Shown in pieces: positions 1 through 41,487 of a stretch of 43,135 nucleotides of DNA. Positions within the stretch are counted from its first letter, which is position 1. Each line of letters opens with the position of its first letter. Under the pieces are notes generated by a model. The model searched no databases and had not been told where the DNA came from. It saw nothing but the letters and a program-made list of their open reading frames with translations. Position numbers and translations under genes: made by a program. The DNA is from Octopus bimaculoides (Eukaryota): positions 20,420,411-20,463,545 of the forward strand of contig NC_069007.1 of assembly GCF_001194135.2 (NCBI RefSeq), read 5' to 3'.

Positions 1-520
1 TTACAATTATCGAAGAAGGATTTCCCGCAAATTTCACAGTGAAATGTTTTTTCCCCATTGTGAATTCGTTCATGTCTTTTTAAATCATCATTATTAAAGT
101 AAGATTTCCCACATATTTCGCAGTGGAATTCTTTCTTTCCAATGTGAATTATTTTGTGCCTTGTTAAATTACTGTTTGAGGAGAAATATTTCCCACAAAT
201 ATCACATTGAGAGGGTTTGTCTCCAGTGTGTACCCTTTTATGAGCAACAAGTAAATAATTATTTAAGAAGGACTTGCCACATATTTCACAGTGAAATGGT
301 GTTTCTCCAGTGTGAACTCTCTTGTGACCAACGAGTATAGAATTATTTAAGAATGATCTTCCACAGATTTCACAGGTATAACGCTTTCCTTCGGTGTGTA
401 ATCTTTTGTGGACTCCAAGAGAATATATATTGGCAAATAATTTCCCACATGTTTCACAGTGATGAGATTTTTCCGCACCGTGAGTCCTTTTGTGTTTTGT
501 TAAGAAACTCTTATACGCAT
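1..520 (-). CDS. C2H2 zinc-finger gene Z0, internal fragment (5' part in or beyond gap 521-620, 3' end off the window)
   Basis: Missed by the ORF track. Manual minus-strand translation is open: AYKSFLTKHKRTH-GAEKSHH-CETCGKLFANIYSLGVHKRLH-...[75 protein letters not shown]. Five complete and two partial fingers. Confidence 0.9.
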
Positions 521-3275: not shown

Positions 3276-4256
3276 ATGGAAGATGGTAATGACTCGGACA
3301 CTTTTGACAGTATAGATTCAGTTAAACAGACATCCGGCGATGAGAAACCAGCATCACCCAGTAAGAAAACTTTATCTCGTAAAGAACAGTCATCAAAGAG
3401 AAATCTTTATTGTGAAATATGTGGAAAATCATTTACTTACAATTTTTGCCTTATTATTCACAAACGTACTCACACTGGGGAAAAACCCTTCCACTGTGAT
3501 GTATGTGGAAAATCATTTGCCGATAAAAGTTGCTTACCGAGTCACAAAAGGATTCACACTGGAGAAAAACCTTACCATTGTGATACATGTGGGAAATCTT
3601 TTGCTAGGAATACTGCCTTAAAAATTCACAAAACAATTCACACTGGAGAAAAACCATTCCAATGTAATATGTGTGGAGAATCGTTTAGCACCACTAAGTC
3701 TGTTCGAGTTCACAAAAGAAAACACATTGAAGGAAGTCTCTATAATTGCCAGATATGTGGACAATCTTTTTTGATGAAGTCTCATCTCGCTAAACACAAA
3801 ACGATACACACCGGAGAAAAACGGTTCCACTGTGAAATCTGCGGAATGTCATTTGCCATTAAGGGTTCTTTAACAAGTCACAAAAGGGTTCACACGGGAG
3901 AAAAACCTTTCTTTTGCGATATATGTGAGAAATATTTCTACTGTAAGAGTAATTTAACAAGGCACAAGCTACAACATATTGGGGAAAAGGCCTTTCACTG
4001 TGATGTATGTGGAAAATCTTACTTTAATAATTGTGATTTAAAAAGACATAAAAGAATTCATGATGGAGAAAAAACATTTCACTGTGAAATTTGTGGGAAA
4101 TCCTTCTTTGATAATTGTAATCTTATAGCCCACATTCGTAGTCACACTGGAGAAAGGCCCTATCATTGTGATGTCTGTGAGAAATCGTTTACTTATAAAA
4201 GTCACTTGAATACGCATAAACAAAAACACACTGGAGATAGTCCCCTACTGTTGTGA
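3276..4256 (+). CDS. C2H2 zinc-finger protein ZA, 10 fingers, single coding exon
   Basis: ORF 3252..4256; first ATG (MEDGN) at 3276; ten CxxC-x12-HxxxH repeats with TGEKP-like linkers. Confidence 0.93.
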   Translation: MEDGNDSDTFDSIDSVKQTSGDEKPASPSKKTLSRKEQSSKRNLYCEICGKSFTYNFCLIIHKRTHTGEKPFHCDVCGKSFADKSCLPSHKRIHTGEKPYHCDTCGKSFARNTALKIHKTIHTGEKPFQCNMCGESFSTTKSVRVHKRKHIEGSLYNCQICGQSFLMKSHLAKHKTIHTGEKRFHCEICGMSFAIKGSLTSHKRVHTGEKPFFCDICEKYFYCKSNLTRHKLQHIGEKAFHCDVCGKSYFNNCDLKRHKRIHDGEKTFHCEICGKSFFDNCNLIAHIRSHTGERPYHCDVCEKSFTYKSHLNTHKQKHTGDSPLLL

Positions 4257-6329
4257 AATATGTGGAGAAATCATTTGTCTGTCGTAGTAATTAGAACAAA
4301 AACACAATGGAGACAATATTGAAATGATTTGTTTGAAACATTCTCTAGAAATAGAAGCAAAAAGAACAAATTACTGAGAAATTTAAGTAAAAATTTGTGA
4401 TAAAATTTTTACTTTTTTCAGTCACTGAACTGCAACCTTGCTGGAGCCACCACCTTGCAGGGTTTAATCAAACAAATCAGCCCGAACTTATTATATTAGT
4501 CAGTCTTTGCTGAACTGCTAAGTTACATGGATGTAAACAAATTAACACTAGTCAAATAAAGGAGGGTGACAAACACAAAGACACAAATCCCTAAAAGGGA
4601 TGAAAGTGCTAAATGAATACACATTGTTGATTGGTTAAAATTACCCAAATACAACAACTTTAACACAAAATAACTTCTAAAATACAAAATTTTATCTAAA
4701 ATGTTGAAAGTAAACCGTGTTCAGCATGAGAAATTACACCAGTATATGAAGTTTCAAACTGTTTAGTTAAAATAATAAGTAATTAAATAATCTGTGAGTG
4801 AAACTGAAGAGACCCCAAAACCCTTTGTGTTTCAGGCATAAGGAAGGAAGCAGTCTGGGAAATGTCCACTAAGCTTACACCAACATTTGGAGAGTGGCTA
4901 CTAACCTAACGCCAAGGAGTTTGAGTAACAGAATCGGTGTAACTGGACATTTCCTGGACTGCTCTCTTCTGGGGATGAACCTTTGTGCCAGAAATATAAA
5001 GCTTTTTGTAAAACTTTCTTCATTGTTAGAAGATTTCCTTTTCTTTTCCTCCTTCAGAAGTACAATGCTTCAAGCAAACTACAATGTTCTTATTCCATTC
5101 TTCATATTTAATCCTTCTGTTACCATATTTCTGTAGAAATACAGACTTTGTTTTAATTAATTTTGAAAATAAAGGAGAATTTAATGATATACTTTTGTCA
5201 TTATTAAGCTCGTGTTTGGGACATGAATTAATATGAAATTTTGAAGGAAGCTTTTTTTTTTTTTTGTTTTAATTTAAATCACTTTTAAGCTGAAAGTTTG
5301 TATCTTAGAACCAGGAATAGTCTGAACTGGTTTGATGTCAAAAAGGTTTTTATGTAGTTTTGATATTTTTGTCATTTGTTTCACATGCATATATAGAAAT
5401 AGCAACCCAAATGTTTTTAAGTCAGATCCCAATGCTGGATGTTCAAGAACCAAATGAAGGGCAAATTTTCAATGCTGGGATCAACCGGATTCTAAAAAGG
5501 TATAATATGTCTCTGTAGAGCAAACGTAGACTGAGATACAGGGGTCCCAGACAGACAAGATTTTGCTTTTATTAATATAGATATAGAGAAGTATACGGTG
5601 ATATTCATACAGATGTGTTGGACATACCGGGCGTACGATTAAAACAAACTTCACACAAATAATTTTTTAAAATACCAACATGGAGCAAACGAAACGCACT
5701 ATGATATTGAATGTGTTCTCATTCGTTTTTGTCAAATTTATGCAAGTTTAAAGTGTCTTTTGGTGTTTTTGTAATAACCTTTCCGNNNNNNNNNNNNNNN
5801 NNNNNNNNNNNNNNNNNNNNNNNNNNNNNNNNNNNNNNNNNNNNNNNNNNNNNNNNNNNNNNNNNNNNNNNNNNNNNNNNNNNNNNNNNNNNNNNNNNNN
5901 NNNNNNNNNNNNNNNNNNNNNNNNNNNNNNNNNNNNNNNNNNNNNNNNNNNNNNNNNNNNNNNNNNNNNNNNNNNNNNNNNNNNNNNNNNNNNNNNNNNN
6001 NNNNNNNNNNNNNNNNNNNNNNNNNNNNNNNNNNNNNNNNNNNNNNNNNNNNNNNNNNNNNNNNNNNNNNNNNNNNNNNNNNNNNNNNNNNNNNNNNNNN
6101 NNNNNNNNNNNNNNNNNNNNNNNNNNNNNNNNNNNNNNNNNNNNNNNNNNNNNNNNNNNNNNNNNNNNNNNNNNNNNNNNNNNNNNNNNNNNNNNNNNNN
6201 NNNNNNNNNNNNNNNNNNNNNNNNNNGTTTTTCTTTTCACATTCGATATATCCAGCGTTTAATACATATTAAAAAACATTTAATCTGAACGTAAAGAGAG
6301 GTGTGTGTTTTAAAGAAATTACTTTCTCA

Positions 6330-6690
6330 TTTCAGGAAGACCAAGTTAACTTTAGTATTTTCCATTATTGCTATTCCCAATTTGAATCACATCGTTTCCT
6401 GCTATATTTCCTCGCGATATTTATTTTGGTAAATGATGGATCTTTGATTTACCAACGGCTTGAAAACTGTTTCTGTCTGTATTAAATTATGTCAGGGACA
6501 TTTCTGTCACATCACCGGTAGTATCATTGAGGCGAGAGAAAAATCATCAACGGTTGACTCATTATATGTCAGGTAATTTAATTATATTATGTGTAGTAAT
6601 TAACTCAGGAACATTAATGTTTTTAGATAGCTTAAAGCAACCGATATGATGTATCAGACTCGGCGTTCGATCCCCGGGATGATTAAATAT
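6330..6690 (+). promoter_or_regulatory. Conserved 5' module of ZB: AAGTTAACTT motif, TATTAAA, short exon, donor at 6573, intronic hairpin element
   Basis: Same block precedes ZB-ZI, always in gene orientation. CAG|GTAATT donor at 6572/6573; matching acceptor TTTACAG|TTGTG at 7881/7882. Confidence 0.65.
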
Positions 6691-7389
6691 TTCCTTTTCA
6701 TTATAAATACGTTACGTCGTTAATTGATTGTTCCTTAATTGATAACAGTGTCTCCAATTAAAGTATTTTATTATTCTCCTTATTGTGTCTTCTTAGACGT
6801 GTGATCTCCCGGTGCGTGGATCATAATTAAGATTGGGATCCCCTGTTTTACAGGACAGCTGAAATGTGCTTTAATCAACAACTAACGAGTAATTAATTAA
6901 CTTTGCTTGATTCTTCCTTACTTTTCAGGTTATATTTAAGTTTAAAGTATATATCTGTATTGCTGGATCTTGTTAAATTTCTTTCAAATTACCTGAAGTT
7001 TTTCGAATTTCCACGAGAGTATTTTCAAAACATGTCGTTCTGATGTAGTTTTCGATGCTGTCGGCGAATATTGCATCAATTTTTTTTTCCTCAGATTAAT
7101 CTCAAAAAACCTTACAAGCATTTAAAATTATGTAGTTTTAACCAATTGCAATATATATCGCTGGACATACCAGGAAACATGACTGTTTGTCTTCATGGAA
7201 CAGCATACACGACGTCTTTACATGACCACTCGACCTGCTAGAAATAGCAACCAAATCTTTCTTAAATCATAACATTTAAAAAAACAAAATGATAATGCAT
7301 TGTACTACAACACTGTTTATTTCTTCACTTGAGGCAGACCCAGGTGGTTTCAGCTTAGTGAGTTGCTCTTATTATATTTAAATTAATGT

Positions 7390-7475: not shown

Positions 7476-8151
7476 GGGTGCATAACTTCCAGAAAAACGG
7501 ATACTTTTTAACGAATTTTTCAACAAATTATCGCTTAGATCCTCTAGATTTAGTGTATGTAAAAAGATTTGTTGGAAAAAAATTGGGTGGGGGAGTTTCG
7601 GTAAATTCACACGTTCCGACATTCCCCCCCCCCTCATACCTTTCTGGAAAATAGGTATTTTTTAATGAAATTTTGGCTATCTTTCGATTTGATGTGAGGA
7701 AATGTCAAGTGAAAGGCACATGGGTTTCTTTACATCTAATCGGCCTGCAGTCTCATGATCACTTGTAACCAAAGAGGTCTTGACCCTTTACTAAGTGTGT
7801 GTGATCAATTGTTATTTATTCAGACTTGATATACTTTGACCAACATTTGTCTTATACAGTCATATTTTTTTTCTTTTACAGTTGTGCTGAATGTTCCATT
7901 ACAAACTGTCATATAAAAATACCAGTTCCACCAGAATATTTGCTACCAGTTATTTATGGATACCCTCTTTCTCTAAGTCTTCAGCCTACATAACTTCTTT
8001 TCACTATATCTGCAATTATTAATGTAGTCTTTTTGTCTACAGTGTGTGTGCCACGTAGAGATGTCCCAGCCAGAAACAAACATTCTGAGTGTTCTGCAGA
8101 AAATAAATCTATGTTGAATATTTTCTCCACCTGTAAACAGTGTCCCATGAG

Positions 8152-8184
8152 ATGGATATCATAAGACAAGAAATTGAACCATAA
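8152..8184 (+). other. Upstream ORF MDIIRQEIEP* (exemplar; homologues before all nine genes with a visible 5' end)
   Basis: ATG GAT ATC ATA AGA CAA GAA ATT GAA CCA TAA, followed by TAG; out of frame with the main ATG and ending 49 nt before it. Confidence 0.55.
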
Positions 8185-8233
8185 TAGATTATATCCACAG
8201 ACATCAGTTTTCAAGAATTCTTCCAGAGCTAAT

Positions 8234-9550
8234 ATGGAGGATGGTAATCACTCAGACACTTCTAACACAAATGTTTCCGATGATACAGATTCTGTTAAAC
8301 AGACATCCAACGTGGGGAAACCATTATCTCATAAAGAAAGGTTGTCAAAGAAAAATATTAATTGTGAAATATGTGGAAAATCTTTTGTGAATTCCAGTAA
8401 TTTAACAAAACACAAAAGATTACACACTGGGGAAAAACCATTTCAGTGTGAGATTTGTGGTAAGTCTTTGAATCAGAAATACCACCTTATTGTCCACAAA
8501 CGTAGCCACACTGGAGAAAAACCCTATCACTGTGATATATGTGGAAAATCATTTGTTGATTATACTTATTTAACAAGTCACAAAAGAATACATACTGGAG
8601 AAAAATCTTTTGTCTGTCAAATATGTGGAAAATCATTTACTCATAATTCTCGCCTTGTTGCCCATGTACGAAGTCACACAGGAGAAAAACCTTTCCACTG
8701 TGAAATATGTGGAAAATCCTTTGTCAGTAATAGTTCTCTAAGAAGTCACAGCAGAATTCACACTGGAGAGAAACCATATCAGTGCGTTATATGTGGCAAA
8801 TCATTTATTAGTAATAGCGCTTTAAAGATTCACAGAAGAATTCACACTGGGGAGAGACCTTATTGCTGTGATATATGTGAAAAATCTTTTGTCAATAGCA
8901 GTTGTCTAACAATTCACAAAAGAATTCACACCGGAGAAAAGCCTTATCACTGTGAAATATGTGGGAAAGCCTTCATTAACAGCTCAAAACTTGTTATCCA
9001 CGTGCACAGTCACACTGGAGAAAAGCCTCACCGCTGTGAAATATGTGGAAAATCATTTATTAGGAATTCCCGTCTTCTACTTCACAAAAGGGTACACACT
9101 GGAGAGAAGCCTTATTATTGCGAGATATGTGGAAAATCGTTTATTAATAACTCACATCTCATTGGTCACAGAAGAATACATACAGGAGAAAAACCATTCC
9201 CTTGTGAAATTTGTGGGAAATCTTTCTATTCTGGCAGTAATTTAAGAAGACACAATATAATACACACTGAGAAAAAAGAATTCCACTGCGAAATATGTGG
9301 AAAATCTTACTTTAATAATTGTGATTTAAAAAGACACAAAAGAATTCATGATGGAGAAAAAACATTTCACTGTGAAATTTGTGGGAAATCTTTCTTCGAT
9401 AATTGTAATCTTATAGTCCATGTCCGTAGTCACACTGGAGAAAGGCCTTGTTCCTGTGAAATATGTGGTAAATCATTTATTTGTAAAAGTCACTTGAATA
9501 GCCACGTTCGAACACACAGTAAAGAAAAACCTTTGAATTGTGATTCATGA
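8234..9550 (+). CDS. C2H2 zinc-finger protein ZB, 14 fingers
   Basis: ORF 8174..9550; ATG of MEDGN at 8234; 14 tandem fingers; ends SKEKPLNCDS. Confidence 0.95.
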   Translation: MEDGNHSDTSNTNVSDDTDSVKQTSNVGKPLSHKERLSKKNINCEICGKSFVNSSNLTKHKRLHTGEKPFQCEICGKSLNQKYHLIVHKRSHTGEKPYHCDICGKSFVDYTYLTSHKRIHTGEKSFVCQICGKSFTHNSRLVAHVRSHTGEKPFHCEICGKSFVSNSSLRSHSRIHTGEKPYQCVICGKSFISNSALKIHRRIHTGERPYCCDICEKSFVNSSCLTIHKRIHTGEKPYHCEICGKAFINSSKLVIHVHSHTGEKPHRCEICGKSFIRNSRLLLHKRVHTGEKPYYCEICGKSFINNSHLIGHRRIHTGEKPFPCEICGKSFYSGSNLRRHNIIHTEKKEFHCEICGKSYFNNCDLKRHKRIHDGEKTFHCEICGKSFFDNCNLIVHVRSHTGERPCSCEICGKSFICKSHLNSHVRTHSKEKPLNCDS

Positions 9551-10149
9551 GAAATGCATTCTTTGTAACTCTTTGTAACTTACTTTCTTTAGTCTACTGA
9601 CTTGTATTCACCGAAGATTTATCATTGTGAATTCTAGAAGGCTGGAGATTATCTCAGCTAACAACAAACAAGATCAGGACAAATATCTGCTAAATGTAAA
9701 TAATGATTTATTTATAAGAGTATAAATAAAATGCATAAATGAATAAACAAATCAATTAATTGTTGTTANNNNNNNNNNNNNNNNNNNNNNNNNNNNNNNN
9801 NNNNNNNNNNNNNNNNNNNNNNNNNNNNNNNNNNNNNNNNNNNNNNNNNNNNNNNNNNNNNNNNNNNNNNNNNNNNNNNNNNNNNNNNNNNNNNNNNNNN
9901 NNNNNNNNNNNNNNNNNNNNNNNNNNNNNNNNNNNNNNNNNNNNNNNNNNNNNNNNNNNNNNNNNNNNNNNNNNNNNNNNNNNNNNNNNNNNNNNNNNNN
10001 NNNNNNNNNNNNNNNNNNNNNNNNNNNNNNNNNNNNNNNNNNNNNNNNNNNNNNNNNNNNNNNNNNNNNNNNNNNNNNNNNNNNNNNNNNNNNNNNNNNN
10101 NNNNNNNNNNNNNNNNNNNNNNNTTTTTGGAGTTCCTTTAAAATTTGAA

Positions 10150-10240: not shown

Positions 10241-10610
10241 CTGAAACATTGTGTTAACAACAAACAAGATCAGGACAAATATCTGCTAAATGTAAATAAT
10301 GATTTATTTATAAGAGTATAAATAAAATGCATAAATGAATAAACAAATCAATTAATTGTTGTTATAGTATATATCAAAATACAGGTGAGGATATAAACCT
10401 TGGAGGGATAGAGATATCCAAGATTAGACTGGTTAAATTCCTAACAATATAGGAACATATATATATATTATTATTATAAATACCAAGTGATGAATTGAAA
10501 CAAATGTAGGTCTGGTCTTGTCAATGTATTAATAAACTTTTATTAATCTTATCTCCATCTTCTCTCTTGGTTTTTATAATATCAATAATATATATGTATA
10601 TATATATATG

Positions 10611-11439: not shown

Positions 11440-11745
11440 ATTTGAGGCAAGCCAAGATAACTTTAGCATTTTCCGTTATTGCTATTCCCAGTTTAAATCA
11501 CATTGCTTCTTGCTTATATTTCCTCGTGATATTTATTTTGTTAAGCGATCGATCTTAGATTTACGAACGGTTTGAAAACTGTTTCTGCCTGTATTAAATT
11601 ATGTCAGGGACATTTCAGTCACATCACCGGTTGTATCATTGAGGCGAGAGAAAAATCATCAACGGTCAACTTATTAAATGTCAGGTAATTTAATTATATT
11701 ATGTGTAGTAATTAACTCAGGAACACTTATGCTTTTAGATAGCTT
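11440..11745 (+). promoter_or_regulatory. Conserved 5' module of ZC (intronic hairpin element deleted)
   Basis: TATTAAA 11592; donor 11684/11685; acceptor 12494/12495. Confidence 0.6.
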
Positions 11746-12782
11746 CAGACGTGTGATCTCCCGGTCCGTGGATCATAATTAAGATTGGGGGCCGCTTTTT
11801 TACAGGACAGCTGAAATGTGTTTTAATCAACAACTAACGAGTAATTAATTAACTTTGCTTGATTCTTTTTCACTTTTAATGACATTTAAATTTAAAGCCC
11901 ATATTATCTGTATTGCTGGATCTTGTTAAATTTCTTTCAAATTACCTGAGGTTTTTCGAATTTCCACGAGAGTATTTTCAAAACATGTTCTGATGTAGTT
12001 TTCGATGCTGATAGCGAAAATTGCATCAATTTTTTTTTTTACTCGGATTAATCTAAAAAAAAACCTTACAAATATTTAAAATAATATAGTTTTAACTAAT
12101 CGCAATATATATTGCTGGACATACCAGGAAACGTGACTGTCCCCATAGAACAGCATACACGACGTCTTTACACGACCACTCGACCATATTTCGCGTTACT
12201 CCAGTTCACTCAGCTGTAGAAATGATTTGCGATATCACTGGTGCCAAGCTGCATTGACTTTTGCTTTCCCTTGGATAACATCGGTGGCGTGTGGAGGAGA
12301 GACTGGTATGTGTGGGCAACTGTTGATCCGTAAACAACCTTGCCTTGACTTTAGGTGCAATCTCATGGTCACTTGTGACCAAGGTGGGGTCTTGACCCTT
12401 TACTATGTGTGTGTGAACAATTGTTATTTATTCAGACTTGATATACTTTGACCAACATTTGTCTTATACAGTCATATATTTTTCTCCTTTTCAGTTGTGC
12501 TGAATGTTCCATTACAAACTGTCATATGAAAATACCAGTTCCACCAGAATATTTGCTACCAGTTATTTATGGATGCCCTTTTTCTTCAGCCTACATAACT
12601 TCTTTTCACTATATCTGCAATTATTAATGTAGTCTTTTTGTCTACAGTATGTGTGCCACATGTTGCATATTTTCTCCACCTGTAAACAAAGTCCCATGGG
12701 ATGGATATCGTAAGACAAGAAATTGAACCGTAATAGATTATATCCACAGACATCAGTTTTCATGAATTCCACTGGTGTTGAT

Positions 12783-13835
12783 ATGGAGGATGGTAATCAC
12801 TCAGACACTTCTAATACAATTGTTTCTGATGATACAGATTCTGTTAAACAGACATCCAACGTGAGGAAACCATTATCTCATAAAGAAGGGTTGTCAAAGA
12901 AAAATATCAATTGTGAAATATGTGGAAAATCTTTTGTGAATTCCAGTAATTTAAAAAACCATAAAAGATTACACACTGGGGAAAAACCATTTCAGTGTGA
13001 TATATGTGGAAAATCATTCAATCAGAAATACCAACTTATTGTCCACAAGCGTAGCCACACTGGAGAAAAACCCTATCACTGTGATATATGTGGAAAATCA
13101 TTTGTTGATTCCACTAATTTAACAAGTCACAAACGAACACATACTGGAGAAAAATCTTTTGTCTGTCAAATATGTGGAAAATCATATACGCATAATTCTC
13201 GCCTTGTTGACCATGTACGAAGTCACACAGGAGAAAAGCCTTTCCACTGTGAAATATGTGGAAAATCATTTGTCACTAATAGTTCTTTGAGCTATCACAG
13301 AAAAATCCACACTGGAGAGAAACCATATCAGTGCGTTGTATGTGGGAAATCTTTTATTATTCATAGTGCCTTGAAAATCCACAGAACAATTCACACTGGA
13401 GAGAGACCTTACTGCTGTGATATATGTGGAAAGTCTTTTCTCAATAGTGGTTCTTTAACAAATCACAAAAGATTTCACACTGGAGAAAAGCTTCATCACT
13501 GTGAAATATGTGGAAAATCATTTATTAGGAAAGCTTGTCTTGTAGTTCACAAAAGAGTACACACTGGAGAGAAGCCTTATTATTGTGAAACATGTGGAAA
13601 ATCGTTTATTAATGTCTCAAATCTCATTGTTCACAGAAGAACACATACAGGAGAAAAACCATTCCATTGTGAAATATGTGGAAAATCTTTCTGCTCTGGC
13701 AGTGATTTAAAAAGACACACTATTGTACACACTGAGAAAAAAGAATTCCACTGTGAAATATGTGGAAAATCTTATTTTAATAATTGTAGTTTAAAAAGAC
13801 ACAAAAGAATTCATGATGGAGAACGAAACATTTAA
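12783..13835 (+). CDS. C2H2 zinc-finger protein ZC, 11 in-frame fingers, C-terminally truncated by a frameshift
   Basis: ORF 12723..13835; MEDGN ATG at 12783, with an in-frame ATG at 12762. A 1-nt insertion (GGAGAACGAAACATTT vs GGAGAAAAAACATTT in ZE) ends the protein at HDGERNI*. Confidence 0.85.
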   Translation: MEDGNHSDTSNTIVSDDTDSVKQTSNVRKPLSHKEGLSKKNINCEICGKSFVNSSNLKNHKRLHTGEKPFQCDICGKSFNQKYQLIVHKRSHTGEKPYHCDICGKSFVDSTNLTSHKRTHTGEKSFVCQICGKSYTHNSRLVDHVRSHTGEKPFHCEICGKSFVTNSSLSYHRKIHTGEKPYQCVVCGKSFIIHSALKIHRTIHTGERPYCCDICGKSFLNSGSLTNHKRFHTGEKLHHCEICGKSFIRKACLVVHKRVHTGEKPYYCETCGKSFINVSNLIVHRRTHTGEKPFHCEICGKSFCSGSDLKRHTIVHTEKKEFHCEICGKSYFNNCSLKRHKRIHDGERNI

Positions 13836-14013
13836 CTGTAAAATTTGTGGGAAATCCTTCTATAATTGTAATCTTAAAGTCCATATTCGTAGCCACACTG
13901 GAGAAAGGCCTTGTTCCTGTGAAATATGTGGTAAATCATTCATCTGTAAAAGTCACTTGAATACCCACATTCGAACACACAGTAAAGAAAAACCTTTGAA
14001 TTGTGATTCATGA
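13827..14013 (+). pseudogene. Out-of-frame last two fingers of ZC
   Basis: ORF 13813..14013 encodes [61 protein letters not shown]. The first finger is also one codon short relative to ZE (SFFYNCSL). Confidence 0.85.
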
Positions 14014-15229: not shown

Positions 15230-15593
15230 TCATTTCAGGAAAACCAAGTTAACTTTAGTATTTTCCATTATTGCTATTCCCAATTTGAATCACATCGTTT
15301 CCTGCTATATTTCCTCGCGATATTTATTTTGGTAAATGATGGATCTTTGATTTACCAACGGCTTGAAAACTGTTTCTGTCTGTATTAAATTATGTCAGGG
15401 ACATTTCTGTCACATCACCGGTAGTATCATTGAGGCGAGAGAAAAATCATCAACGGTCGACTCATTATATGTCAGGTAATTTAATTATATTCTGTGTAGT
15501 AATTAACTCAGGAACATTAATCTTTTTAGATAACATAAAGCAACCGATATGATGTATCAGACTCGGCGTTCGATTCCCGGGATGATTAAATAT
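15230..15593 (+). promoter_or_regulatory. Conserved 5' module of ZD
   Basis: AAGTTAACTT 15246; TATTAAA 15383; donor 15475/15476; acceptor 16459/16460. Confidence 0.65.
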
Positions 15594-16811: not shown

Positions 16812-18044
16812 ATGGAGGATGGTAATCTCTCAGACACTTCTAACACAAATGCTTCCAATGATACAAATTCTGTTAAACAGACATCCAACGTGGGGAAACC
16901 ATTATCTCATAAAGAAGGGTTGTCAAAGAAAAATATTAATTGTGAAATATGTGGAAAATCTTTTGCGAATTCCAGTAATTTAACAAAACACAAACGATTA
17001 CACACTGGGGAAAAACCATTTCAGTGTGAGATTTGTGGAAAGGCATTCAATCAGAAATACCAACTTATTGTCCACAAACGTAGCCACACTGGAGAAAAAC
17101 CCTATCACTGTGATATATGTGGAAAATCATTTGTTGATTCCACTAATTTAACAAGTCACAAACGAACACATACTGGAGAAAAATCTTTTGTCTGTCAAAT
17201 ATGTGGAAAATCATATACGCATAATTCTCGCCTTGTTGACCATGTACGAAGTCACACAGGAGAAAAGCCTTTCCACTGTGAAATATGTGGAAAATCGTTT
17301 GTCAGTAATAGTGCTTTAAGCAGTCACAACAAAATCCACACTGGAGAGAAACCATATCAGTGCGTTATATGTGGAAAATCATTTATTAATAATAGTGCCT
17401 TAAAAATTCACAAAAGAATTCACACTGGAGAGAGACCTTATTGCTGTGATATATGTGGAAAATCTTATCTCCATAATGATTGTTTAACAAATCATAAAAG
17501 AATTCACACTGGAGAAAAACCTCATCACTGTGAAATATGTGGAAAATCATTTATTAGGAATTCTTGTCTTCTAGTTCACAAAAGAGTACACACTGGAGAG
17601 AAGCCTTATTATTGTGAAACATGTGGAAAATCGTTTATTAATGTCTCAAATCTCATTTTTCACAGAAGAATACATACTGGAGAAAAGCCATTCCCTTGTG
17701 AAATTTGTGGGAAATCTTTCCGTTCTGGTAGTAATTTAAGAAGACACAATATAATACACAGTGAGAAAAAAGAATTCCACTGTGAAATTTGTGGGAAATC
17801 TTACTTTAATAATTGTGATTTAAAAAGACACAAAAGAATTCATGATGAAGAAAAAACATTTCACTGTGAAATTTGTGGGAAATCTTTCTTCAATAATTGT
17901 CATCTTATAGTCCATGTTCGTAGCCACACTGGAGAAAGGCCTTGTTCCTGTGAAATATGTGGTAAATCATTTATTTGTAAAAGTCACTTGAATACCCACA
18001 TTCGAACACACAGGAAAGGAAAACCTTTGAATTGTGATTCATGA
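16812..18044 (+). CDS. C2H2 zinc-finger protein ZD, 13 fingers
   Basis: Intact ORF from MEDGN; 13 fingers; ends RKGKPLNCDS. Confidence 0.95.
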   Translation: MEDGNLSDTSNTNASNDTNSVKQTSNVGKPLSHKEGLSKKNINCEICGKSFANSSNLTKHKRLHTGEKPFQCEICGKAFNQKYQLIVHKRSHTGEKPYHCDICGKSFVDSTNLTSHKRTHTGEKSFVCQICGKSYTHNSRLVDHVRSHTGEKPFHCEICGKSFVSNSALSSHNKIHTGEKPYQCVICGKSFINNSALKIHKRIHTGERPYCCDICGKSYLHNDCLTNHKRIHTGEKPHHCEICGKSFIRNSCLLVHKRVHTGEKPYYCETCGKSFINVSNLIFHRRIHTGEKPFPCEICGKSFRSGSNLRRHNIIHSEKKEFHCEICGKSYFNNCDLKRHKRIHDEEKTFHCEICGKSFFNNCHLIVHVRSHTGERPCSCEICGKSFICKSHLNTHIRTHRKGKPLNCDS

Positions 18045-19439: not shown

Positions 19440-19685
19440 AGATTTACCAACGGCTTGAAAACTGTTTCTGCCTGTATTAAATTATGTCAGGGACATTTCA
19501 GTCACATCACCGGTAGTATCATTGAGGCGAGAGAAAACTCATCAACGGTCGACTTATTAAATGTCAGGTAATTTAATTATATTATGTGTAGTAATTAACT
19601 CAGGAACATTAATGTTTTTAGATAGCTTAAAGCAACCGATATGATGTATCAAACTCGGCGTTCGATCCCCGAGATGATTAAATAT
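19440..19685 (+). promoter_or_regulatory. Conserved 5' module of ZE (upstream palindrome segment missing)
   Basis: TATTAAA 19475; donor 19567/19568; acceptor 20533/20534. Confidence 0.62.
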
Positions 19686-19821
19686 TTCCTTTTCATTATA
19701 AATACATTACATCGTTAATTGATTGTTCCTTAATTGATAACAGTGTCTCCAATTAAAGTATTTTAATATTCTCCTTATTGTGTCTTGTGAGATGTGTGAT
19801 CTCCCGGTGCGTAGTGTGTGT

Positions 19822-20928: not shown

Positions 20929-22245
20929 ATGGAGGATGGTAATCACTCAGGCACTTCTAATACAATTGTTTCTGATGATACAGATTCTGTTAAACAGACA
21001 TCCAACGTGAGGAAACCATTATCTCATAAAGAAGGGTTGTCAAAGAAAAATATTAATTGTGAAATATGTGGAAAATCTTTTGCGAATTCCAGTAATTTAA
21101 TAAAACACAAAAGATTACACACTGGGGAAAAACCATTTCAGTGTGAGATTTGTGGTAAATCATTCAATCAGAAATACCAACTTATTGTCCACAAACGGAG
21201 TCACACTGGAGAAAAACCCTATCACTGTGATATATGTGGAAAATCATTTGTTGATTCCACTAATTTAACAAGTCACAAACGAACACATACTGGAGAAAGA
21301 TCTTTTGTCTGTCAAATATGTGGAAAATCATATACACATAATTCTCGCCTTGTTGACCATGTACGAAGTCACACAGGAGAAAAGCCTTTCCACTGTGAAA
21401 TATGTGGAAAATCATTTGTCACTAATAGTTCTTTGAGCAGTCACAGCAAAATTCACACTGGAGAGAAACCATATCAGTGCGTTATATGTGGGAAATCTTT
21501 TATTAATAATAGTGCCTTAAAAATTCACAAAAGAATTCACACTGGGGAGAGACCTTACTGCTGTGATATATGTGGAAAATCTTTTCTCAATAGTGGTTGT
21601 TTATCAAATCACAAAAGAATTCACACCGGAGAAAAGCCTCATCACTGTGAACTATGTGGGAAATCCTTCATTGATAGCTCAAAACTTGTTATCCACGTGC
21701 ATAGTCACACTGGAGAAAAGCCTCACCGCTGTGAAATATGTGGAAAATCATTTATTAGGAATTCTTGTCTTGTAGTTCACAAAAGGGTACACACTGGAGA
21801 GAAGCCTTATTATTGTGAGATATGTGGAAAATCGTTTATTAATATCTCAAATCTCATTGTTCACAGAAGAATACATACAGGAGAAAAACCATTCCCTTGT
21901 GAAATATGTGGGAAATCTTTCTGTTCTGGCAGTGATTTAAAAAGACACACTATTGTACACACTGAGGAAAAAGAATTTCACTGCGAAATATGTGGGAAAT
22001 CTTACTTTAATAATTGTGGTTTAAATAGACACAAAAGAATTCATGATGGAGAAAAAACATTTAACTGTGAAATTTGTGGGAAATCTTTCTTCTATAATTG
22101 TAGTCTTAAAGTCCATATTCGTAGCCACACTGGAGAAAGGCCTTGTTCCTGTGAAATATGTGGTAAATCATTTATTTGTAAAAGTCACTTGAATAGCCAC
22201 GTTCGAACACACAGGAAAGGAAAACCTTTGAATTGTGATTCATGA
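20929..22245 (+). CDS. C2H2 zinc-finger protein ZE, 14 fingers
   Basis: ORF 20869..22245; MEDGN ATG at 20929, with an in-frame ATG at 20908; 14 fingers. Confidence 0.95.
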   Translation: MEDGNHSGTSNTIVSDDTDSVKQTSNVRKPLSHKEGLSKKNINCEICGKSFANSSNLIKHKRLHTGEKPFQCEICGKSFNQKYQLIVHKRSHTGEKPYHCDICGKSFVDSTNLTSHKRTHTGERSFVCQICGKSYTHNSRLVDHVRSHTGEKPFHCEICGKSFVTNSSLSSHSKIHTGEKPYQCVICGKSFINNSALKIHKRIHTGERPYCCDICGKSFLNSGCLSNHKRIHTGEKPHHCELCGKSFIDSSKLVIHVHSHTGEKPHRCEICGKSFIRNSCLVVHKRVHTGEKPYYCEICGKSFINISNLIVHRRIHTGEKPFPCEICGKSFCSGSDLKRHTIVHTEEKEFHCEICGKSYFNNCGLNRHKRIHDGEKTFNCEICGKSFFYNCSLKVHIRSHTGERPCSCEICGKSFICKSHLNSHVRTHRKGKPLNCDS

Positions 22246-24644: not shown

Positions 24645-25056
24645 TACTCGTTTCAGAAATGCTAAGTTAATTTTTTTGTATTCGTCATTTTCACATGTTC
24701 CCACTTTGAATTTTCCCTGTTTTCTCTATATTTACCAGCAATATTTATTTAAACGACGATAACTATTTGGTTGAATAATGTATTTTTGATTTATACCATA
24801 GACAGGATATAGATCAAAGAATAAGGGTGTTACCGACTGTATTAAATTATGTTAGGGACATTTAATTTATATCACCGGTAGTATCATTCAAACGACAGAA
24901 AAATCAATAACAACCCGGCCAACAGAGTATATTTCAGGTAATTTAATTATATTATGTGTAGTAATTAAGGTGAACGTTGATGTTTATAAATAGCAACTTA
25001 AAGCGACCGATTTGATGTATCGAAGTCGGTGTTCCATCACCTGGATGATTAAATAT
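24645..25056 (+). promoter_or_regulatory. Conserved 5' module of ZF (diverged)
   Basis: TCGTTTCAGAAATGCTAAGTTAATTT near 24650; TATTAAATTATGTTAGGGACATTT 24840; donor 24937/24938; acceptor 26034/26035. Confidence 0.62.
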
Positions 25057-26479: not shown

Positions 26480-27619
26480 ATGGAGAACGGTAATCTGTCA
26501 GACATTTCTAACAAAACTGTTTCTGACAATATAGATTCAGTTAAACAGACATCCGGTAGTGAGAAACCACTGTCTCATAAACGAAGTTCATTACAGAAAA
26601 ATATTCATTGTGAAATTTGTGGGAAATTATATACTTACAAGTCTCAACTTATTGTCCATAAACGTAGTCACACTGGAGAAAAGCCATCTCACTGTGACAC
26701 CTGTGGAAAATCGTTTGTGAATAATAGTTCACTGACGAATCACAAAAAAATTCACAATGGAGAAAAGCAATACCACTTTGAAATATATGGGAACTCAGTT
26801 GTCAACAATGGTTATTTAAGAATCCATAAAAGAAAACACTTTGACAAAAAACTGTTTCACTGTGAAATATGTAGAAAATCTTTCATGAACATTGCTAAAC
26901 TTGTTACTCATAGACGTCTTCACAGTGGAGAAGAAACGTACTGCTGTGACATATGTGGAAAATCATTCATTAGCAATTCTCGTTTTGTAGGTCACCAACG
27001 AAAACACACGGGAGAAAACCCCTTTCACTGCAAAATCTGTGGTAAATATTTCATTAATAATTCCCATCTTGTTGCTCACAAAACAGTACACACTGGAGAA
27101 AAACCATTCCACTGTGAAATATGTGGGAAATATTTCTCCTGTAGGAGTAATTTAAGAAGGCACAATATAATACACACTGGGAAAAAAGAATTCAAATGTG
27201 AGATATGTGGGAATTCTTTTTTTTATAAATCACTTCTTGTTGGTCATGAAAAAGTGCATACTGGAGACAAACCCTCTCATTGTGATATATGTGGGAAATA
27301 TTTCTATTCTAGCAGTAATTTAAGAAGACACAAAATAATACACACTGAGAAAAAAGAATTCCACTGTGAAATATGTGGGAAATCTTATTTTAATAATTGT
27401 GACTTAAAAAGACATAAAAGAATTCATAATGGTGAAAAAACATTTCACTGTGAAATTTGTGGGAAATCCTTCTTCGATAATTCTAACCTTATTGTTCACA
27501 TCCGTAGTCACACTGGAGAAAGGCCCTATCATTGTGACGTATGTGATAAATCATTTATCTGTAAAAGTCATTTGAATTGTCACAAACGAACACACACCAC
27601 AAAGACAATATCATTGTGA
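26480..27619 (+). CDS. C2H2 zinc-finger protein ZF, 12 finger units (unit 3 degenerate)
   Basis: Intact ORF starting MENGN; the third unit reads FEIYG in place of CEICG. Confidence 0.93.
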
Positions 27620-29972: not shown

Positions 29973-31163
29973 TTAAGGCTTCTCTCCTGTGTGTATTCGC
30001 TTGTGCTTATTTAAGTAAGTTTGATAGATGAATGATTTTCCACATATTTCACAGTGCCATGGCCTGTCACCAGTGTGGATACGAATGTGACCTCTAAGAT
30101 TAGATTTATCAGAGAATGATTTACCACATATTTCACAATGGAATGGTTTCTCTCCGGTGTGTACTCTTAAGTGACAAACAAGTACACCATTATTAAGGAA
30201 CGCCTTTCCACATATTTCACAGTGGAAAAGTTTTTCCCCAGAATGTATTTTTTTATGAACTACAAGACGAGAATTGATAATGAACGATTTCCCACATATA
30301 TCACAATGATAGGTTTTTTCTTTGCTATGAATCTGTACATGTGTAACAAGTGTTGATTTATTGATGAAGCATTTTCCACATATTTCACAGTCAAACGGTT
30401 TGTCTCCAGTGTGAATTCGTTTGTGAATTGTTAAATAGCCATTACTGGCAAAAGATTTCCCACAGATTTCACAGTAGAAAGGTTTTTCTCCTGTGTGAAT
30501 CCTTTTGTGACGTGTTACATCACACTTATACACAAACGATTTTCCACATATATCACAGTGGTAAGGTTTTTCATCAGTGTGGAATTTTTTGTGAATTGTT
30601 AGACAACTATTATTGACAAAGGATTTCCCACAAGTTTCACAGTGATAAGGTTTTTCTCCAATGTGGATTCTTTTGTGAGCTGTTAAAGAACTATTACCAA
30701 CAAATGATTTTCCACATATTTCACAGTGGAATGGCTTTTCTCCAGTGTGTCTACGGATGTGGAGAACAAGTTGAGAATTATGGGTAAACGAATTTCCACA
30801 TATCTCGCACTCAAAAGAATTTTCTCCAGTGTGGATTCTTTTGTGATTTCGTAAATAACTATTATCCGCAAATGATTTTCCACACGTTTCACAGTTGTAG
30901 GGTTTTTCTCCAGTGTGACTACGTTTGTGGACGATAAGGTGAACATTCTGATTCAATAATTTTCCACAAATTTCACATCGAAATGGTTTTTTTCCTGTAT
31001 GTAATCTTTTGTGCGTTGTTAAATTACTTCTGTTCGCAAAAGATTTTCCACAAATTTCACATTTAATATGTTTCTCTAATGGACTTTCTTTACATGATAA
31101 TATCTCACCACTGGATGTCTGTTTAACTGAATTTATAGTGTCTGAGTAATTACCATCCTCCAT
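29973..31163 (-). CDS. C2H2 zinc-finger protein ZG, 13 fingers
   Basis: ORF 29973..31187 (TTG start called by the track); MEDGN ATG at 31163; ends TGEKP*. Confidence 0.94.
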   Translation of the reverse strand: MEDGNYSDTINSVKQTSSGEILSCKESPLEKHIKCEICGKSFANRSNLTTHKRLHTGKKPFRCEICGKLLNQNVHLIVHKRSHTGEKPYNCETCGKSFADNSYLRNHKRIHTGENSFECEICGNSFTHNSQLVLHIRRHTGEKPFHCEICGKSFVGNSSLTAHKRIHIGEKPYHCETCGKSFVNNSCLTIHKKFHTDEKPYHCDICGKSFVYKCDVTRHKRIHTGEKPFYCEICGKSFASNGYLTIHKRIHTGDKPFDCEICGKCFINKSTLVTHVQIHSKEKTYHCDICGKSFIINSRLVVHKKIHSGEKLFHCEICGKAFLNNGVLVCHLRVHTGEKPFHCEICGKSFSDKSNLRGHIRIHTGDRPWHCEICGKSFIYQTYLNKHKRIHTGEKP

Positions 31164-35912: not shown

Positions 35913-37299
35913 ATGGAGGATGGTAATCACTCAGACACTTCTAACACAAATGTTTCTGACAATATAGATTCTGTTAAACAGACATCTGATGGAGAGAGAT
36001 CATTACTGTGTGAAACATTTACGAAACGGAAATCATTACAGAGAAATATTAATTGTGAAATATGTGGGAAATCTTTTGTTAACAGAAGTAATTTATCAAA
36101 ACACAAAAGATTACACACTGGAAAAAAACCATTTCATTGTGAAATTTGTGGGAAATCTTTTAATCAGAAAACTCATCTTGTTAATCATATACGTAATCAC
36201 ACTGGAGAAAAACCTTACCATTGTGAAATATGTGGAAAATCATTTGTTGATAATAGTTATTTAACGAGCCATAAAAGAATGCACACTGGGGAAAACTCAT
36301 TNNNNNNNNNNTGTTGATAATAGTTATTTAACGAGCCATAAAAGAATGCACACTGGGGAAAACTCATTAGACTGTGAGATATGTGGGAAATCTTTTCCTT
36401 ATAACTCTCGCCTTGTTATCCATATGCGTAGTCACACGGGAGAGAAACCATTCCACTGTGAAATATGCGGAAAATCATTTGTCGACAATAGTTATTTAAC
36501 GAGTCACGTAAGGATTCACACTGGAGAAAAACGCTATCATTGCGAAGTATGTGGAAAGTCTTTTATCAAGAATTCCAGTCTTGTCACTCACATACGAAGT
36601 CACACTGGAGAAAAGCCTTATTCTTGTGATTTATGTGGCAAATCATTTGTCAATAATAGTTATTTGACAATTCACAAAAGGAAACACATGGGGGAAAGTT
36701 TGTTTCATTGTGAAACATGTGGGAAATCTTTCCCAAATAACTTGAAATTTGTTACCCACATGCGTATTCACACTGGAGAAAAACCTTACCACTGTGAAAT
36801 ATGTGGTAAGTCGTTCATTAAAAATTCTCGTCTTGTCATTCACCAGAGAATACACACGGGAGAAAAGCCATATAATTGTGAAATATGTGGGAAATCTTTT
36901 ATTAATAATTCTCGTCTCGTTACTCACAAACGAGTACACACTGGAGAGAAACCCTACCACTGTGACACATGTGGGAAATCTTTCTTCTCTAGCAGTAATT
37001 TAAAAAGACACAAATTACAACACATTGGTGAAAGGGCCTTCCATTGTGAAACATGTGGGAAATCCTACTTCAATAATAGTGATTTAAAAAGACACAAAAG
37101 GGAACATGGTGGAGAAAAAACATTCCACTGCGAAATCTGTGGCAAATCCTTCTTCGATAATTCTAATCTTATAGTTCACATCAGGAGTCACACTGGAGAG
37201 AGGCCCTATCATTGTGACGTCTGTGAGAAATCATTTATCTGTAAAAGTGACTTGAATAAACATAAACGGAGACACACCGGTGAGAAACCTAGTAACTGA
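35913..37299 (+). CDS. C2H2 zinc-finger protein ZH, probably 14 fingers, split by an assembly gap
   Basis: ORFs 35913..36317 and 36346..37299 are separated by 10 N, flanked by an identical 57-bp sequence (36245-36301 = 36312-36368). Collapsing the overlap gives one ORF. Confidence 0.88.
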
Positions 37300-40087: not shown

Positions 40088-41487
40088 TCATGTTTCACAG
40101 TCCAAAGGCTTCCCTTTACTGTGTGTTCGTTTGTGTTTATTTACATCACTTTTACAAATAAATGCTTTCTCACAGATTTCACACTGATAAGGTCTTTCTC
40201 CAGTATGGGTACGGACATGAACTATAAGGTTAGAATGATCGAAGAATGATTTTCCACAAATTTCACAGTGAAAAGTCTTATCGCCCTCATGTCTTCTCTT
40301 GTGTCTTTTTAAATCACTGTTATTCACATAAGTTTTCCCACATATTTCACAACGGAATGCTTTTTTCCCCATATGTAATAACTTGTGTCTTGCTAAATTA
40401 CTGCTCGAGTAAAANNNNNNNNNNNNNNNNNNNNNNNNNNNNNNNNNNNNNNNNNNNNNNNNNNNNNNNNNNNNNNNNNNNNNNNNNNNNNNNNNNNNNN
40501 NNNNNNNNNNNNNNNNNNNNNNNNNNNNNNNNNNNNNNNNNNNNNNNNNNNNNNNNNNNNNNNNNNNNNNNNNNNNNNNNNNNNNNNNNNNNNNNNNNNN
40601 NNNNNNNNNNNNNNNAAAGGTTTTTCGCCAGTGTGTATCCTTTTATGAACTATAAGTTGACATTTCTGGATGAACGATTTCTTACAAATTTCACAATGAT
40701 ATGATTTTTCTCCGGTGTGAGTTTGTACATGGGTAGTGAGCTGTAAGTTAGTCATGAAAGATTTTCCACATATTTCACATTGGAACTGTACTTTTCCCCT
40801 GTGAATCCGTTTATGATTGGTTAAATAGCTATTATCAACAAAGGATTTCCCACATATATCACAATGGAAAGGTTTTTCCCCAGTGTGGCTACGATTGTGA
40901 ATAACAAGGTGAGACTTTTGAATAAACGATTTCCCGCATATCTCACAGTGATATGGTTTCTCTCCTGTATGTAACTTTTCATGTGTTTTTAGATTACTCG
41001 AACTCATAAAAGATTTCCCACATATTTCACAATTGTACAGTTTTGCTCCAGTGTGAATATTTATGTGTTTAACAAGGTTCGATCTCTCATTAAATGATTT
41101 ACCACACATTTCGCAATGATATGGCTTTTCTCCCGTATGGATTCTTTTGTGACTTTTTAAAGAGCTGCTATTGACAACTGACTTTCCACATATTTCACAG
41201 CGGAAGGGTCTTTCCCCAGTGTGACTACGTTTGTGGACAGCAAGATGAGACCCCTGATTACATAACTTTCCACAAATCTCACATTCAAACGGTTTTTCCC
41301 CAGTATGTAAATTTTTGTGGATTCGCAAATTACTGGAATTCACAAAAGTTTTCCCACATACCTTACAATCAAAATTTTTCTCTAATGATCTTTGTTTAGT
41401 AGATGCTTCACCTGTTAAACGTTTACCTGTATCTATACTGTCAGAAACAGTTGTGTTAGAAGTGTCTGACTGATTACTGTCCTCCAT
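40088..41487 (-). CDS. C2H2 zinc-finger protein ZI, 13 visible fingers plus about 2 in the gap
   Basis: ORF 40393..41487 has 9 fingers and runs into gap 40415-40615. The frame resumes as FYSSSNLARHKLLH and continues through ORF 40088..40372, ending SKGKPLDCET*. Confidence 0.88.

What the first reader, a model, noticed from the sequence alone, without database searches (positions are those of the whole stretch)
9203..9550. Variable-plus-constant design: an almost invariant C-terminal four-finger cassette behind diversified fingers
Z0 (as far as visible), ZA-ZF, ZH and ZI end with the same series: F..xSNLxRH, then an atypical linker (TEKKEFH or IGEKAFH), SYFNNxDLKRH, another atypical linker (DGEKTFH or NGEKTFH), SFFDNxNLIVH(I/V)RSH, TGERP, and [11 protein letters not shown]. 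Upstream fingers differ in number and helix residues between subfamilies. Conservation includes the base-contacting positions (for example N-1, D3, R6 and D-1, N3) and the non-canonical linkers. Two models fit: a common DNA anchor combined with variable specificity fingers, or a protein-interaction module, as known for the C-terminal fingers of Ikaros-family proteins, acting in place of KRAB. ZG lacks the first two cassette fingers and ZC loses the last two, so both are natural controls.
Basis: partly seen in the sequence, partly recalled or inferred. Interest (0 to 1): 0.75.

Follow-up and report, generated by a model that had tools for sequence, protein, structure and literature searches.

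The report
Conserved end fingers, octopus ZNF cluster
Ten neighbouring octopus zinc-finger genes share the same last three or four fingers, kept by ordinary purifying selection, but their first four fingers are kept just as well, so this is the signature of one tandem gene family rather than a unique constant cassette.

Summary
The window is a tandem cluster of ten effector-less C2H2 poly-zinc-finger genes. It is octopod, closest to Octopus bimaculoides. Coordinates 9203-9550 are the last four fingers plus the stop codon of one gene (ZB).

The series C1-C4 is real. It sits at the C-terminus of 9 of 10 window genes. C1-C2 are also present in all four genes of a second O. bimaculoides locus, where arrays range up to 24 fingers (10-14 in the window).

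Conservation is not due to gene conversion. Synonymous divergence between lineages is as high in the cassette (pS 0.40-0.52) as in other fingers.

"Almost invariant" is overstated:
- Only C2 and C3, and the base-contacting residues of C1, are well kept.
- C4 is poorly kept and is probably not one orthologous finger.
- The N-terminal fingers F1-F4 are equally constrained (pN 0.121 against 0.103; the bootstrap interval spans zero).
- Recent duplicates (ZD, ZE) change cassette contact residues freely.

The real design is a constant N-block, a middle region that turns over by whole fingers, and a constant C-block. The conserved positions favour a shared DNA-reading anchor over an Ikaros-like interaction module. 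Neither model is tested. The finding has modest interest.

The parts
9203..9550 (+). ZB cassette, the finding itself. C1 9203-9286, C2 9287-9370, C3 9371-9454, C4 plus tail and stop 9455-9550.
8234..9550 (+). Gene ZB, one coding exon. Leader MEDGN...SVKQTS 8234-8362, then 14 fingers at a strict 84-nt period. F1-F4 (8363-8698) are the equally conserved N-terminal block.
1..206 (-). Z0 cassette: C1, C2 and the start of C3. It runs off the window edge.
3915..4256 (+). ZA cassette C1-C4. This is a 10-finger gene that lacks F1-F3. A degenerate extra finger lies after the stop.
13668..14013 (+). ZC cassette. C1-C2 are in frame up to a stop at 13835, caused by a 1-nt insertion. C3 (3-nt deletion) and C4 are intact in another frame.
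17697..18044 (+). ZD cassette C1-C4. C3 contact residues have changed to N,C,H,V.
21898..22245 (+). ZE cassette C1-C4. Contact residues have changed in C1, C2 and C3.
27281..27619 (+). ZF cassette C1-C4. An internal C1-like duplicate lies at 27113-27196. An out-of-frame 82-nt tandem copy of C4 starts at 27615.
29973..30137 (-). ZG: only divergent C3-like and C4-like fingers, with no C1 or C2. The N-terminal block F1-F5 is intact.
36961..37299 (+). ZH cassette C1-C4. This 14-finger gene is collinear with ZB.
40088..40414 (-). ZI cassette. C1 is partly hidden by a 201-N gap. C2-C4 follow, with a tail SKGKPLDCET like that of the ZB clade.

Best explanation
The cassette is the C-terminal conserved block of an octopod-specific family of tandemly duplicated Krüppel-type poly-zinc-finger genes.

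Shown:
- Each gene is one coding exon. It encodes a short acidic leader ([20 protein letters not shown]) and 10-24 fingers, with no KRAB, SCAN or BTB domain.
- C1-C3 are inherited from the family ancestor and kept by purifying selection on the protein, not by gene conversion.
- They are one of two conserved blocks. The other is the leader plus F1-F4. The middle changes by gain and loss of whole 84-nt finger units.
- C4 is less conserved and is probably a mixture of two ancestral terminal fingers.

Inferred:
- In C1, and less clearly in C2 and F1-F3, selection falls on the base-reading helix positions.
- In F4, F5, C0 and C4 those positions vary most.
- The most likely role of C1-C3 is therefore sequence-specific DNA reading of a subsite shared by the paralogues. 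The two terminal blocks would act as common anchors. The middle fingers and C4 would set individual specificity.
For: Architecture: for the finger arrays; one search finds only C2H2 Pfam families. Indels of 8 and 19 nt just upstream of the ATG show that the leader ATG is the translation start.

Family beyond the window: the leader profile finds 7 proteins among 1.84 billion, and every one that carries a species name is from O. bimaculoides. Locus L001 (O. bimaculoides CM046627.1) carries four more genes. All four have C1-C2. C3 is visible in LA, LC and LD, and C4 in LC and LD; elsewhere the sequence runs into assembly gaps.

Not gene conversion: pS is 0.40-0.52 in C1-C4 and 0.41-0.56 in F1-F5.

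Purifying selection: pN/pS is 0.13 for C3, 0.23 for C2 and 0.29 for C1.

Contact-position identity: 0.94 for C1, 0.72 for C2, 0.70 for C3 and 0.80 for F1, against 0.29-0.41 for F4, F5, C0 and C4. For C1, only 2 of 126 position subsets reach the observed value.

DNA-binding geometry: all linkers keep 7 residues. The best solved relatives are DNA-bound arrays (ZFP568, Aart, PRDM9, CTCF).
Against: - C1-C3 are not significantly more constrained than F1-F4.
- The contact-position enrichment is nominally significant only for C1.
- In the young ZB-ZE clade the contact residues of C1-C3 differ between copies (C3: DCNV, YCSV, NCHV) with pN/pS up to 0.61. This is odd for an obligatory common anchor.
- The linkers after C1 and C2 lack the Thr and Pro of TGEKP. 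C1 has I/L/V at +9 where the other fingers almost always have Arg.
- No binding, expression or cross-species data were available.
- The AlphaFold model (pLDDT 80, pTM 0.45) is uninformative on finger arrangement.
Confidence: 0.55

Rival explanations
1. Positional (edge) effect with no special function. Unequal crossing-over between 84-nt repeats adds and removes interior fingers, while terminal repeats are spared. The end fingers then simply survive by descent under the same generic purifying selection as every other finger.
For: - Both ends are conserved alike, and pN does not differ significantly.
- Differences between genes are mostly whole-finger indels in the middle.
- Recent two-finger and one-finger tandem duplications are visible in ZF and in LC.
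- Each block can be lost: ZA and ZF lack F1-F3, and ZG lacks C1-C2.
- Recent copies change cassette contact residues.
Against: Conservation in C1, F1 and C2 is concentrated on positions -1, +3 and +6. In F4, F5, C0 and C4 those positions are the least conserved. A purely mutational edge effect does not predict this. C3 has the lowest pN/pS of all fingers (0.13).
Confidence: 0.25
2. Protein-interaction module. The C-terminal fingers mediate self-association or recruit a cofactor, as the C-terminal fingers of Ikaros-family proteins do. This would substitute for the missing KRAB-type effector domain.
For: - No effector domain is present in any gene.
- The linkers after C1 and C2 are degenerate.
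- C1 carries hydrophobic I/L/V at +9 in all lineages.
- C3 is conserved over its whole surface, including the hairpin.
- C2H2 fingers are known to mediate dimerisation in other proteins (PMC12774644, abstract seen).
Against: - The cassette is contiguous with the array at the canonical 84-nt period, not set apart by a spacer.
- The conserved residues are the polar, basic DNA-reading type (S/N/D/R/H).
- In C1 the non-contact helix surface is the variable part (0.38 identity).
- The model shows four separate fingers and no compact unit (pTM 0.45).
- The conserved acidic leader is an alternative candidate effector, analogous to FiNZ.
Confidence: 0.12
3. Concerted evolution. The cassette looks constant because gene conversion between neighbouring paralogues keeps homogenising it.
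For: Two finger pairs have low synonymous difference: ZB-ZF in C1 (1 of 14 sites) and ZB-ZA in C2 (2 of 13.8). The run test gives P=0.0005 for ZB-ZA.
Against: Pooled pS in C1-C4 is 0.40-0.55, the same as in other fingers. Fourfold-site differences are 0.49 in C1-C4. Equally low run-test P values appear between genes of the two different loci, so the test mostly reflects uneven constraint.
Confidence: 0.03

Closest known systems
Lineage-specific C2H2 zinc-finger expansions of octopuses (octopus-specific expansion clusters in Holzinger et al. 2025, PMC12513265; first reported with the O. bimaculoides genome, cited from my own knowledge)
   Same: Tandem clusters of many-finger C2H2 genes that are octopod-specific. 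The leader is found only in octopus proteins where a name is given.
   Different: That paper treats whole genes and their expression. Its text holds no occurrence of 'linker', 'C-terminal' or 'motif'. The finger-level layout described here is not in it.
KRAB zinc-finger gene clusters of tetrapods (for example the 8q24.3 cluster, PMC2865497)
   Same: Tandem paralogues with all fingers in one exon, duplication and deletion of fingers, degenerate fingers, truncation by in-frame stops, and purifying selection on arrays.
   Different: The octopus genes have no KRAB, SCAN or BTB domain. They carry only a 34-47 residue acidic leader.
FiNZ zinc-finger genes of cyprinid fish (Wells et al. 2023, PMC10547256)
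   Same: A large lineage-specific family defined by a short, acidic, otherwise unknown N-terminal sequence in front of a finger array.
   Different: The sequences and the host lineage are unrelated. No conserved terminal-finger blocks were mentioned in the passages I read.
Ikaros-family C-terminal dimerisation fingers
   Same: A conserved C-terminal finger set shared by paralogues.
   Different: From my own knowledge, the Ikaros pair is separated from the DNA-binding fingers by a long spacer and has atypical helices. Here the fingers are contiguous, the linkers have canonical length, and DNA-type contact residues are conserved.
ZFP568 and CTCF long arrays bound to DNA (PDB 5V3J, 5V3M, 5WJQ; 5T0U)
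   Same: These are the best sequence and fold matches. ZFP568 contains linkers as degenerate as those after C1 and C2, yet it is solved on DNA.
   Different: The match is at the generic finger level only (TM 0.41-0.49, about 45% identity). It says nothing about this cassette's target.

Membership tests
Krüppel-type C2H2 poly-zinc-finger proteins | C-x2-C-x12-H-x3-H fingers repeated in tandem | tested here: met
   119 fingers in the window at an 84-nt period.
Krüppel-type C2H2 poly-zinc-finger proteins | Pfam zf-C2H2 and zf-H2C2_2 above their gathering scores | tested here: met
   ZB scores 250 and 363 bits against cut-offs of 25 and 40.
Krüppel-type C2H2 poly-zinc-finger proteins | Seven-residue TGEKP-type linkers | tested here: met
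   The length is always 7. The sequence is canonical in most fingers and degenerate after C1, C2 and F3.
KRAB, SCAN or BTB zinc-finger proteins | N-terminal KRAB, SCAN or BTB effector domain | tested here: not met
   No such Pfam match in ZA, ZB or ZG. The region upstream of the ATG is non-coding, shown by 8-nt and 19-nt indels.
Octopus-specific C2H2 expansion family (leader-bearing) | Shared N-terminal leader MEDGN..SVKQTS | tested here: met
   Present in 9 of 9 visible N-termini. The profile finds O. bimaculoides XP_052833117.1 at E=4.5e-12.
Octopus-specific C2H2 expansion family (leader-bearing) | Tandem genomic clustering | tested here: met
   10 genes in 43 kb of the window and 4 genes in 24.6 kb of L001.
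Ikaros-type C-terminal dimerisation fingers | Finger pair set apart from the DNA-binding fingers by a non-finger spacer | tested here: not met
   C1-C4 continue the array without interruption.
Ikaros-type C-terminal dimerisation fingers | Mediates homo- or heterodimerisation | not testable with these tools
   This needs yeast two-hybrid, co-IP or a multimer model. The single-chain AlphaFold model gives no information on it.
FiNZ zinc-finger genes | The 28-residue FiNZ sequence at the N-terminus | not tested
The resemblance is functional only: short and acidic.

The most novel reading that the evidence does not exclude
An octopod-specific, effector-less zinc-finger family uses two conserved terminal finger blocks (F1-F3 and C1-C3) as a bipartite clamp on a common DNA element, for example one transposon family or satellite. 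Interchangeable middle fingers read the variable part. The short acidic leader, or the C-terminal block itself, recruits the silencing machinery in place of KRAB.
Probability: 0.15. Interest if true: 0.6.

Novelty: new member of a known kind. Interest (0 to 1): 0.3.

Why it matters
Octopuses carry one of the largest C2H2 zinc-finger expansions among invertebrates, and almost nothing is known about how these proteins are built or what they bind.

Subfamilies can be recognised by a leader plus conserved terminal fingers. This gives a practical handle for three tasks:
- Sorting and re-annotating the genes. Public models are poor: XP_052833117.1 is a frameshifted chimera.
- Choosing short constructs (C1-C3, F1-F2) for binding assays.
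- Asking whether paralogues share part of their target.

The result is descriptive. It fits what is already known of tandem zinc-finger gene families and changes no general view.

Tried and rejected
- Protein searches with the cassette, the whole ZB protein and a profile of the last eight fingers were swamped by generic poly-zinc-finger proteins. Nothing exceeded 64% identity to the query (57% for hits covering 60% or more of it), so no count of cassette-bearing proteins was obtained.
- Exact look-ups of seven window proteins and of P0006 failed, so the source record of the window was not found.
- Species was not settled. Window and L001 genes are at most 84% identical, while shared interspersed repeats are 92-94% identical. 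I take this as the same or a very close genome, without proof.
- The O. sinensis locus L002 holds a broken gene of the sister subfamily. It ends after one C2-like finger ([21 protein letters not shown]) and has no C1, C3 or C4. The age of the cassette is therefore unresolved.
- The run test for conversion tracts is confounded by uneven constraint.
- AlphaFold plus Foldseek did not discriminate between the functional models.
- Rfam found nothing in the window.
- I derived a tentative recognition-code target for C3-C2-C1 (roughly NAC-GCA-GAN) from my own knowledge. I did not pursue it, because such predictions are unreliable and no target set was at hand.

Full report
WHAT THE WINDOW IS

- Z0: 1-520, minus strand, runs off the window edge.
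- ZA: 3276-4256.
- ZB: 8234-9550.
- ZC: 12783-13835.
- ZD: 16812-18044.
- ZE: 20929-22245.
- ZF: 26480-27619.
- ZG: 31163-29973, minus strand.
- ZH: 35913-37299.
- ZI: 41487-40088, minus strand.

Each gene is one open reading frame. It encodes a 34-47 residue acidic leader ([20 protein letters not shown]) followed by 10-14 fingers at a strict 84-nt period. Pfam finds only C2H2 families, with no KRAB, SCAN or BTB domain. The sequence just upstream of the ATG is conserved but carries 8-nt and 19-nt indels and an in-frame stop. The leader ATG is therefore the translation start.

ORIGIN

A profile of the nine leaders was scored against 1.84 billion representative proteins. It found seven proteins. 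Every one that carries a species name is from Octopus bimaculoides, including XP_052833117.1.

The gene for that protein lies on chromosome record CM046627.1. The 24.6 kb fetched around it (L001) contain four more family members: LA, LB, LC and LD. Genes of the window and of L001 are at most 84% identical, while shared interspersed repeats are 92-94% identical. I read this as a paralogous cluster of the same or a very close genome. The exact source of the window was not found.

THE OBSERVATION

Coordinates 9203-9550 are exactly the last four fingers, the tail and the stop codon of ZB. It does not occur among the other fingers, apart from duplicate copies in ZF.

In L001, C1-C2 are present in all four genes. 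C3 is present in LA, LC and LD, and C4 in LC and LD. LA and LB run into assembly gaps after that point. The arrays there reach 24 fingers. The cassette is therefore a real family signature that persists while finger number varies from 10 to 24.

ZG has only divergent C3-like and C4-like fingers.

ZC is not a clean control. A single inserted base in the C2 linker shifts the frame, and C3 has lost one codon. Both C3 and C4 are otherwise about 96% identical to their paralogues. This is a very recent lesion or an assembly error.

GENE CONVERSION OR SELECTION

I computed Nei-Gojobori proportions of synonymous (pS) and non-synonymous (pN) differences per finger. I used one representative per lineage (ZB, ZF, Z0, ZA, ZH, ZI, ZG, LA, LC, LD).
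- pS is 0.40, 0.48, 0.52 and 0.49 for C1-C4, and 0.41-0.56 for F1-F5.
- Differences at fourfold sites of conserved codons are 0.49 in C1-C4 and 0.45 in F1-F5.

The cassette is as diverged at silent sites as the rest of the array, so wholesale homogenisation is excluded.

Two finger pairs have few silent differences: ZB-ZF in C1 and ZB-ZA in C2. A run-length permutation test flags ZB-ZA (P=0.0005). The same test gives similar values between genes of the two different loci, so it mainly reflects uneven constraint. At most one short conversion tract is plausible.

IS THE CASSETTE SPECIAL?

pN is 0.117, 0.110, 0.069 and 0.157 for C1-C4. It is 0.118-0.151 for F1-F5 and 0.190 for the finger before C1, which I call C0.

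In the four lineages that have both ends (ZB, ZH, LA, LC), pN is 0.121 for F1-F4 and 0.103 for C1-C3. A codon bootstrap gives a 95% interval for the difference of -0.044 to +0.069.

ZB and ZH are collinear 14-finger proteins. Their per-finger pN ranks as follows:
- Lowest: C3 (0.058), F1 (0.068), F3 (0.077) and C2 (0.085).
- Among the highest: C1 (0.174) and C4 (0.192).

F1-F4 are recognisably the same fingers in ZB-ZE, ZG, ZH, LA, LB and LC, and in part in ZI. F3 also has a degenerate linker.

The correct description has three parts:
- A conserved N-terminal block (leader plus F1-F4).
- A conserved C-terminal block (C1-C3, with C0 and C4 weaker).
- A middle region that differs mostly by whole-finger gains and losses.

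Either block can be lost. ZA and ZF lack F1-F3, and ZG lacks C1-C2.

C4 is probably not one finger. LC carries two terminal fingers, C4a and C4b. The C4 of ZA, ZF and ZH is closer to C4a. The tails of the ZB clade and of ZI match the tail of C4b.

WHERE THE CONSTRAINT FALLS

Across lineages I compared pairwise identity at the four base-reading helix positions (-1, +2, +3, +6) with identity at five other variable helix positions:

| Finger | Base-reading positions | Other helix positions |
|---|---|---|
| C1 | 0.94 | 0.38 |
| C2 | 0.72 | 0.57 |
| C3 | 0.70 | 0.67 |
| F1 | 0.80 | 0.60 |
| F4 | 0.33 | 0.64 |
| C0 | 0.29 | 0.45 |
| C4 | 0.41 | 0.66 |

For C1, only 2 of the 126 possible sets of four positions are as conserved as the contact set. 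For the other fingers the enrichment is a trend only.

The conserved residues are of the DNA-reading kind:
- C1: S, S, N, R.
- C2: N, x, D, R.
- C3: D, x, N, V.

All linkers keep seven residues.

The nearest solved sequences and folds are DNA-bound arrays (ZFP568, Aart, PRDM9, CTCF). ZFP568 has comparably degenerate linkers. The AlphaFold model shows four ordinary fingers (pLDDT 80) without a compact arrangement (pTM 0.45) and does not discriminate further.

This pattern favours a shared DNA-reading role for C1-C3, and likewise for F1-F3. It argues against a protein-interaction surface and against a purely mutational edge effect.

Two points weigh against an obligatory anchor:
- The youngest clade (ZB, ZC, ZD, ZE) differs at exactly these residues. 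C3 reads DCNV, YCSV or NCHV. C2 position +3 is D, G or S. pN/pS reaches 0.61.
- C1 has I/L/V at +9 where the other fingers almost always have Arg.

COMPARISON WITH WHAT IS KNOWN

Large octopus-specific C2H2 expansions in tandem clusters are established. The recent survey of cephalopod C2H2 genes does not address finger-level layout.

Finger duplication and deletion, degenerate fingers, truncation by stop codons and purifying selection on arrays are standard features of tetrapod KRAB-ZNF clusters.

The closest analogue of the leader is the short acidic FiNZ sequence that defines a cyprinid ZNF family.

The Ikaros comparison fails on anatomy, because the cassette is contiguous with the array. 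Function cannot be tested here.

I file this as a new member of a known kind: a subfamily signature within the octopus ZNF expansion.

VERDICT

The cassette is real and extends beyond the window. It is not almost invariant as a whole, and it is not unique in being conserved.
Gene conversion is excluded. The claim of excess constraint over other fingers is not upheld against the N-terminal block. The DNA-anchor model fits best, with moderate confidence.
- Interest is 0.3.

Noticed in passing
window, the ~200-450 nt upstream of each ATG plus the leader (e.g. 7780-8362, 12330-12911, 16360-16940, 26030-26608, 31062-31550 minus, 35460-36053, 41368-41760 minus): The 5' module is conserved at the nucleotide level far more than the finger arrays. 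The 200 nt before the ATG are 77-87% identical between lineages (ZI is lower). The 200 nt after the stop are at the shuffled baseline. Silent differences in the leader are 0.07-0.08, against 0.45-0.49 at fourfold sites of fingers. The cause could be a promoter or 5'UTR constraint, gene conversion of the 5' end, or extra silent change in fingers through micro-conversion. Two polypyrimidine-CAG sites suggest splice acceptors.
   Followed up: partly
window 8363-8698 and the equivalent first four fingers of ZC, ZD, ZE, ZG, ZH, ZI; L001 LA, LB, LC: There is a second conserved block at the N-terminus. F1 is SF.N.SNL..HKRLH, F2 is [14 protein letters not shown]3 is SF.DN.YL..HKR.H with a degenerate linker (TGEN.F.), and F4 is SFPHNS.LV.H.RSH. 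It is as constrained as C1-C3.
   Followed up: yes
window 27113-27280 and 27533-27704: ZF carries a two-finger internal duplication (C1-like plus C0-like). It also has a nearly identical 82-nt tandem copy of C4 that is out of frame and creates its odd tail TTKTISL. ZF finger 3 (26777-26860) has lost both cysteines.
   Followed up: partly
window 4257-4330; L001 17659-17826: The terminal finger comes in two kinds. LC has C4a followed by C4b, and ZA has a degenerate extra finger after its stop. The tails SKEKPLNCDS (ZB clade) and SKGKPLDCET (ZI) match the C4b tail TKGKALNSET.
   Followed up: partly
window 6435-6817, 11532-11745, 15338-15593, 19430-19812, 24828-25098, 33264-33540, 34347-34582, 42370-42703: An interspersed repeat of about 270-380 nt occurs in both orientations between the genes, at 73-98% identity. 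Other repeats are shared with L001 at 92-94%. None matches an Rfam family.
   Followed up: no
L001 10001-14608 (O. bimaculoides XP_052833117.1): The public gene model for LB is a frameshifted chimera. It reads part of the array out of frame and skips C3 and C4 across assembly gaps. Annotation of this family is unreliable.
   Followed up: partly
L002 10001-11450 (O. sinensis CM016873.1): This is a broken gene of a sister subfamily. Its leader is MEDVNYLES... and its first finger is CENCMKVFSSEHELFTHQEMH. It ends after a single C2-like finger, [21 protein letters not shown]. A C2-type finger may therefore predate the split of the two octopus species.
   Followed up: partly
window 9659-9768 and 10255-10364: A 110-nt stretch is exactly duplicated on either side of the 355-N gap. 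This is probably an assembly artefact at a scaffold join.
   Followed up: no
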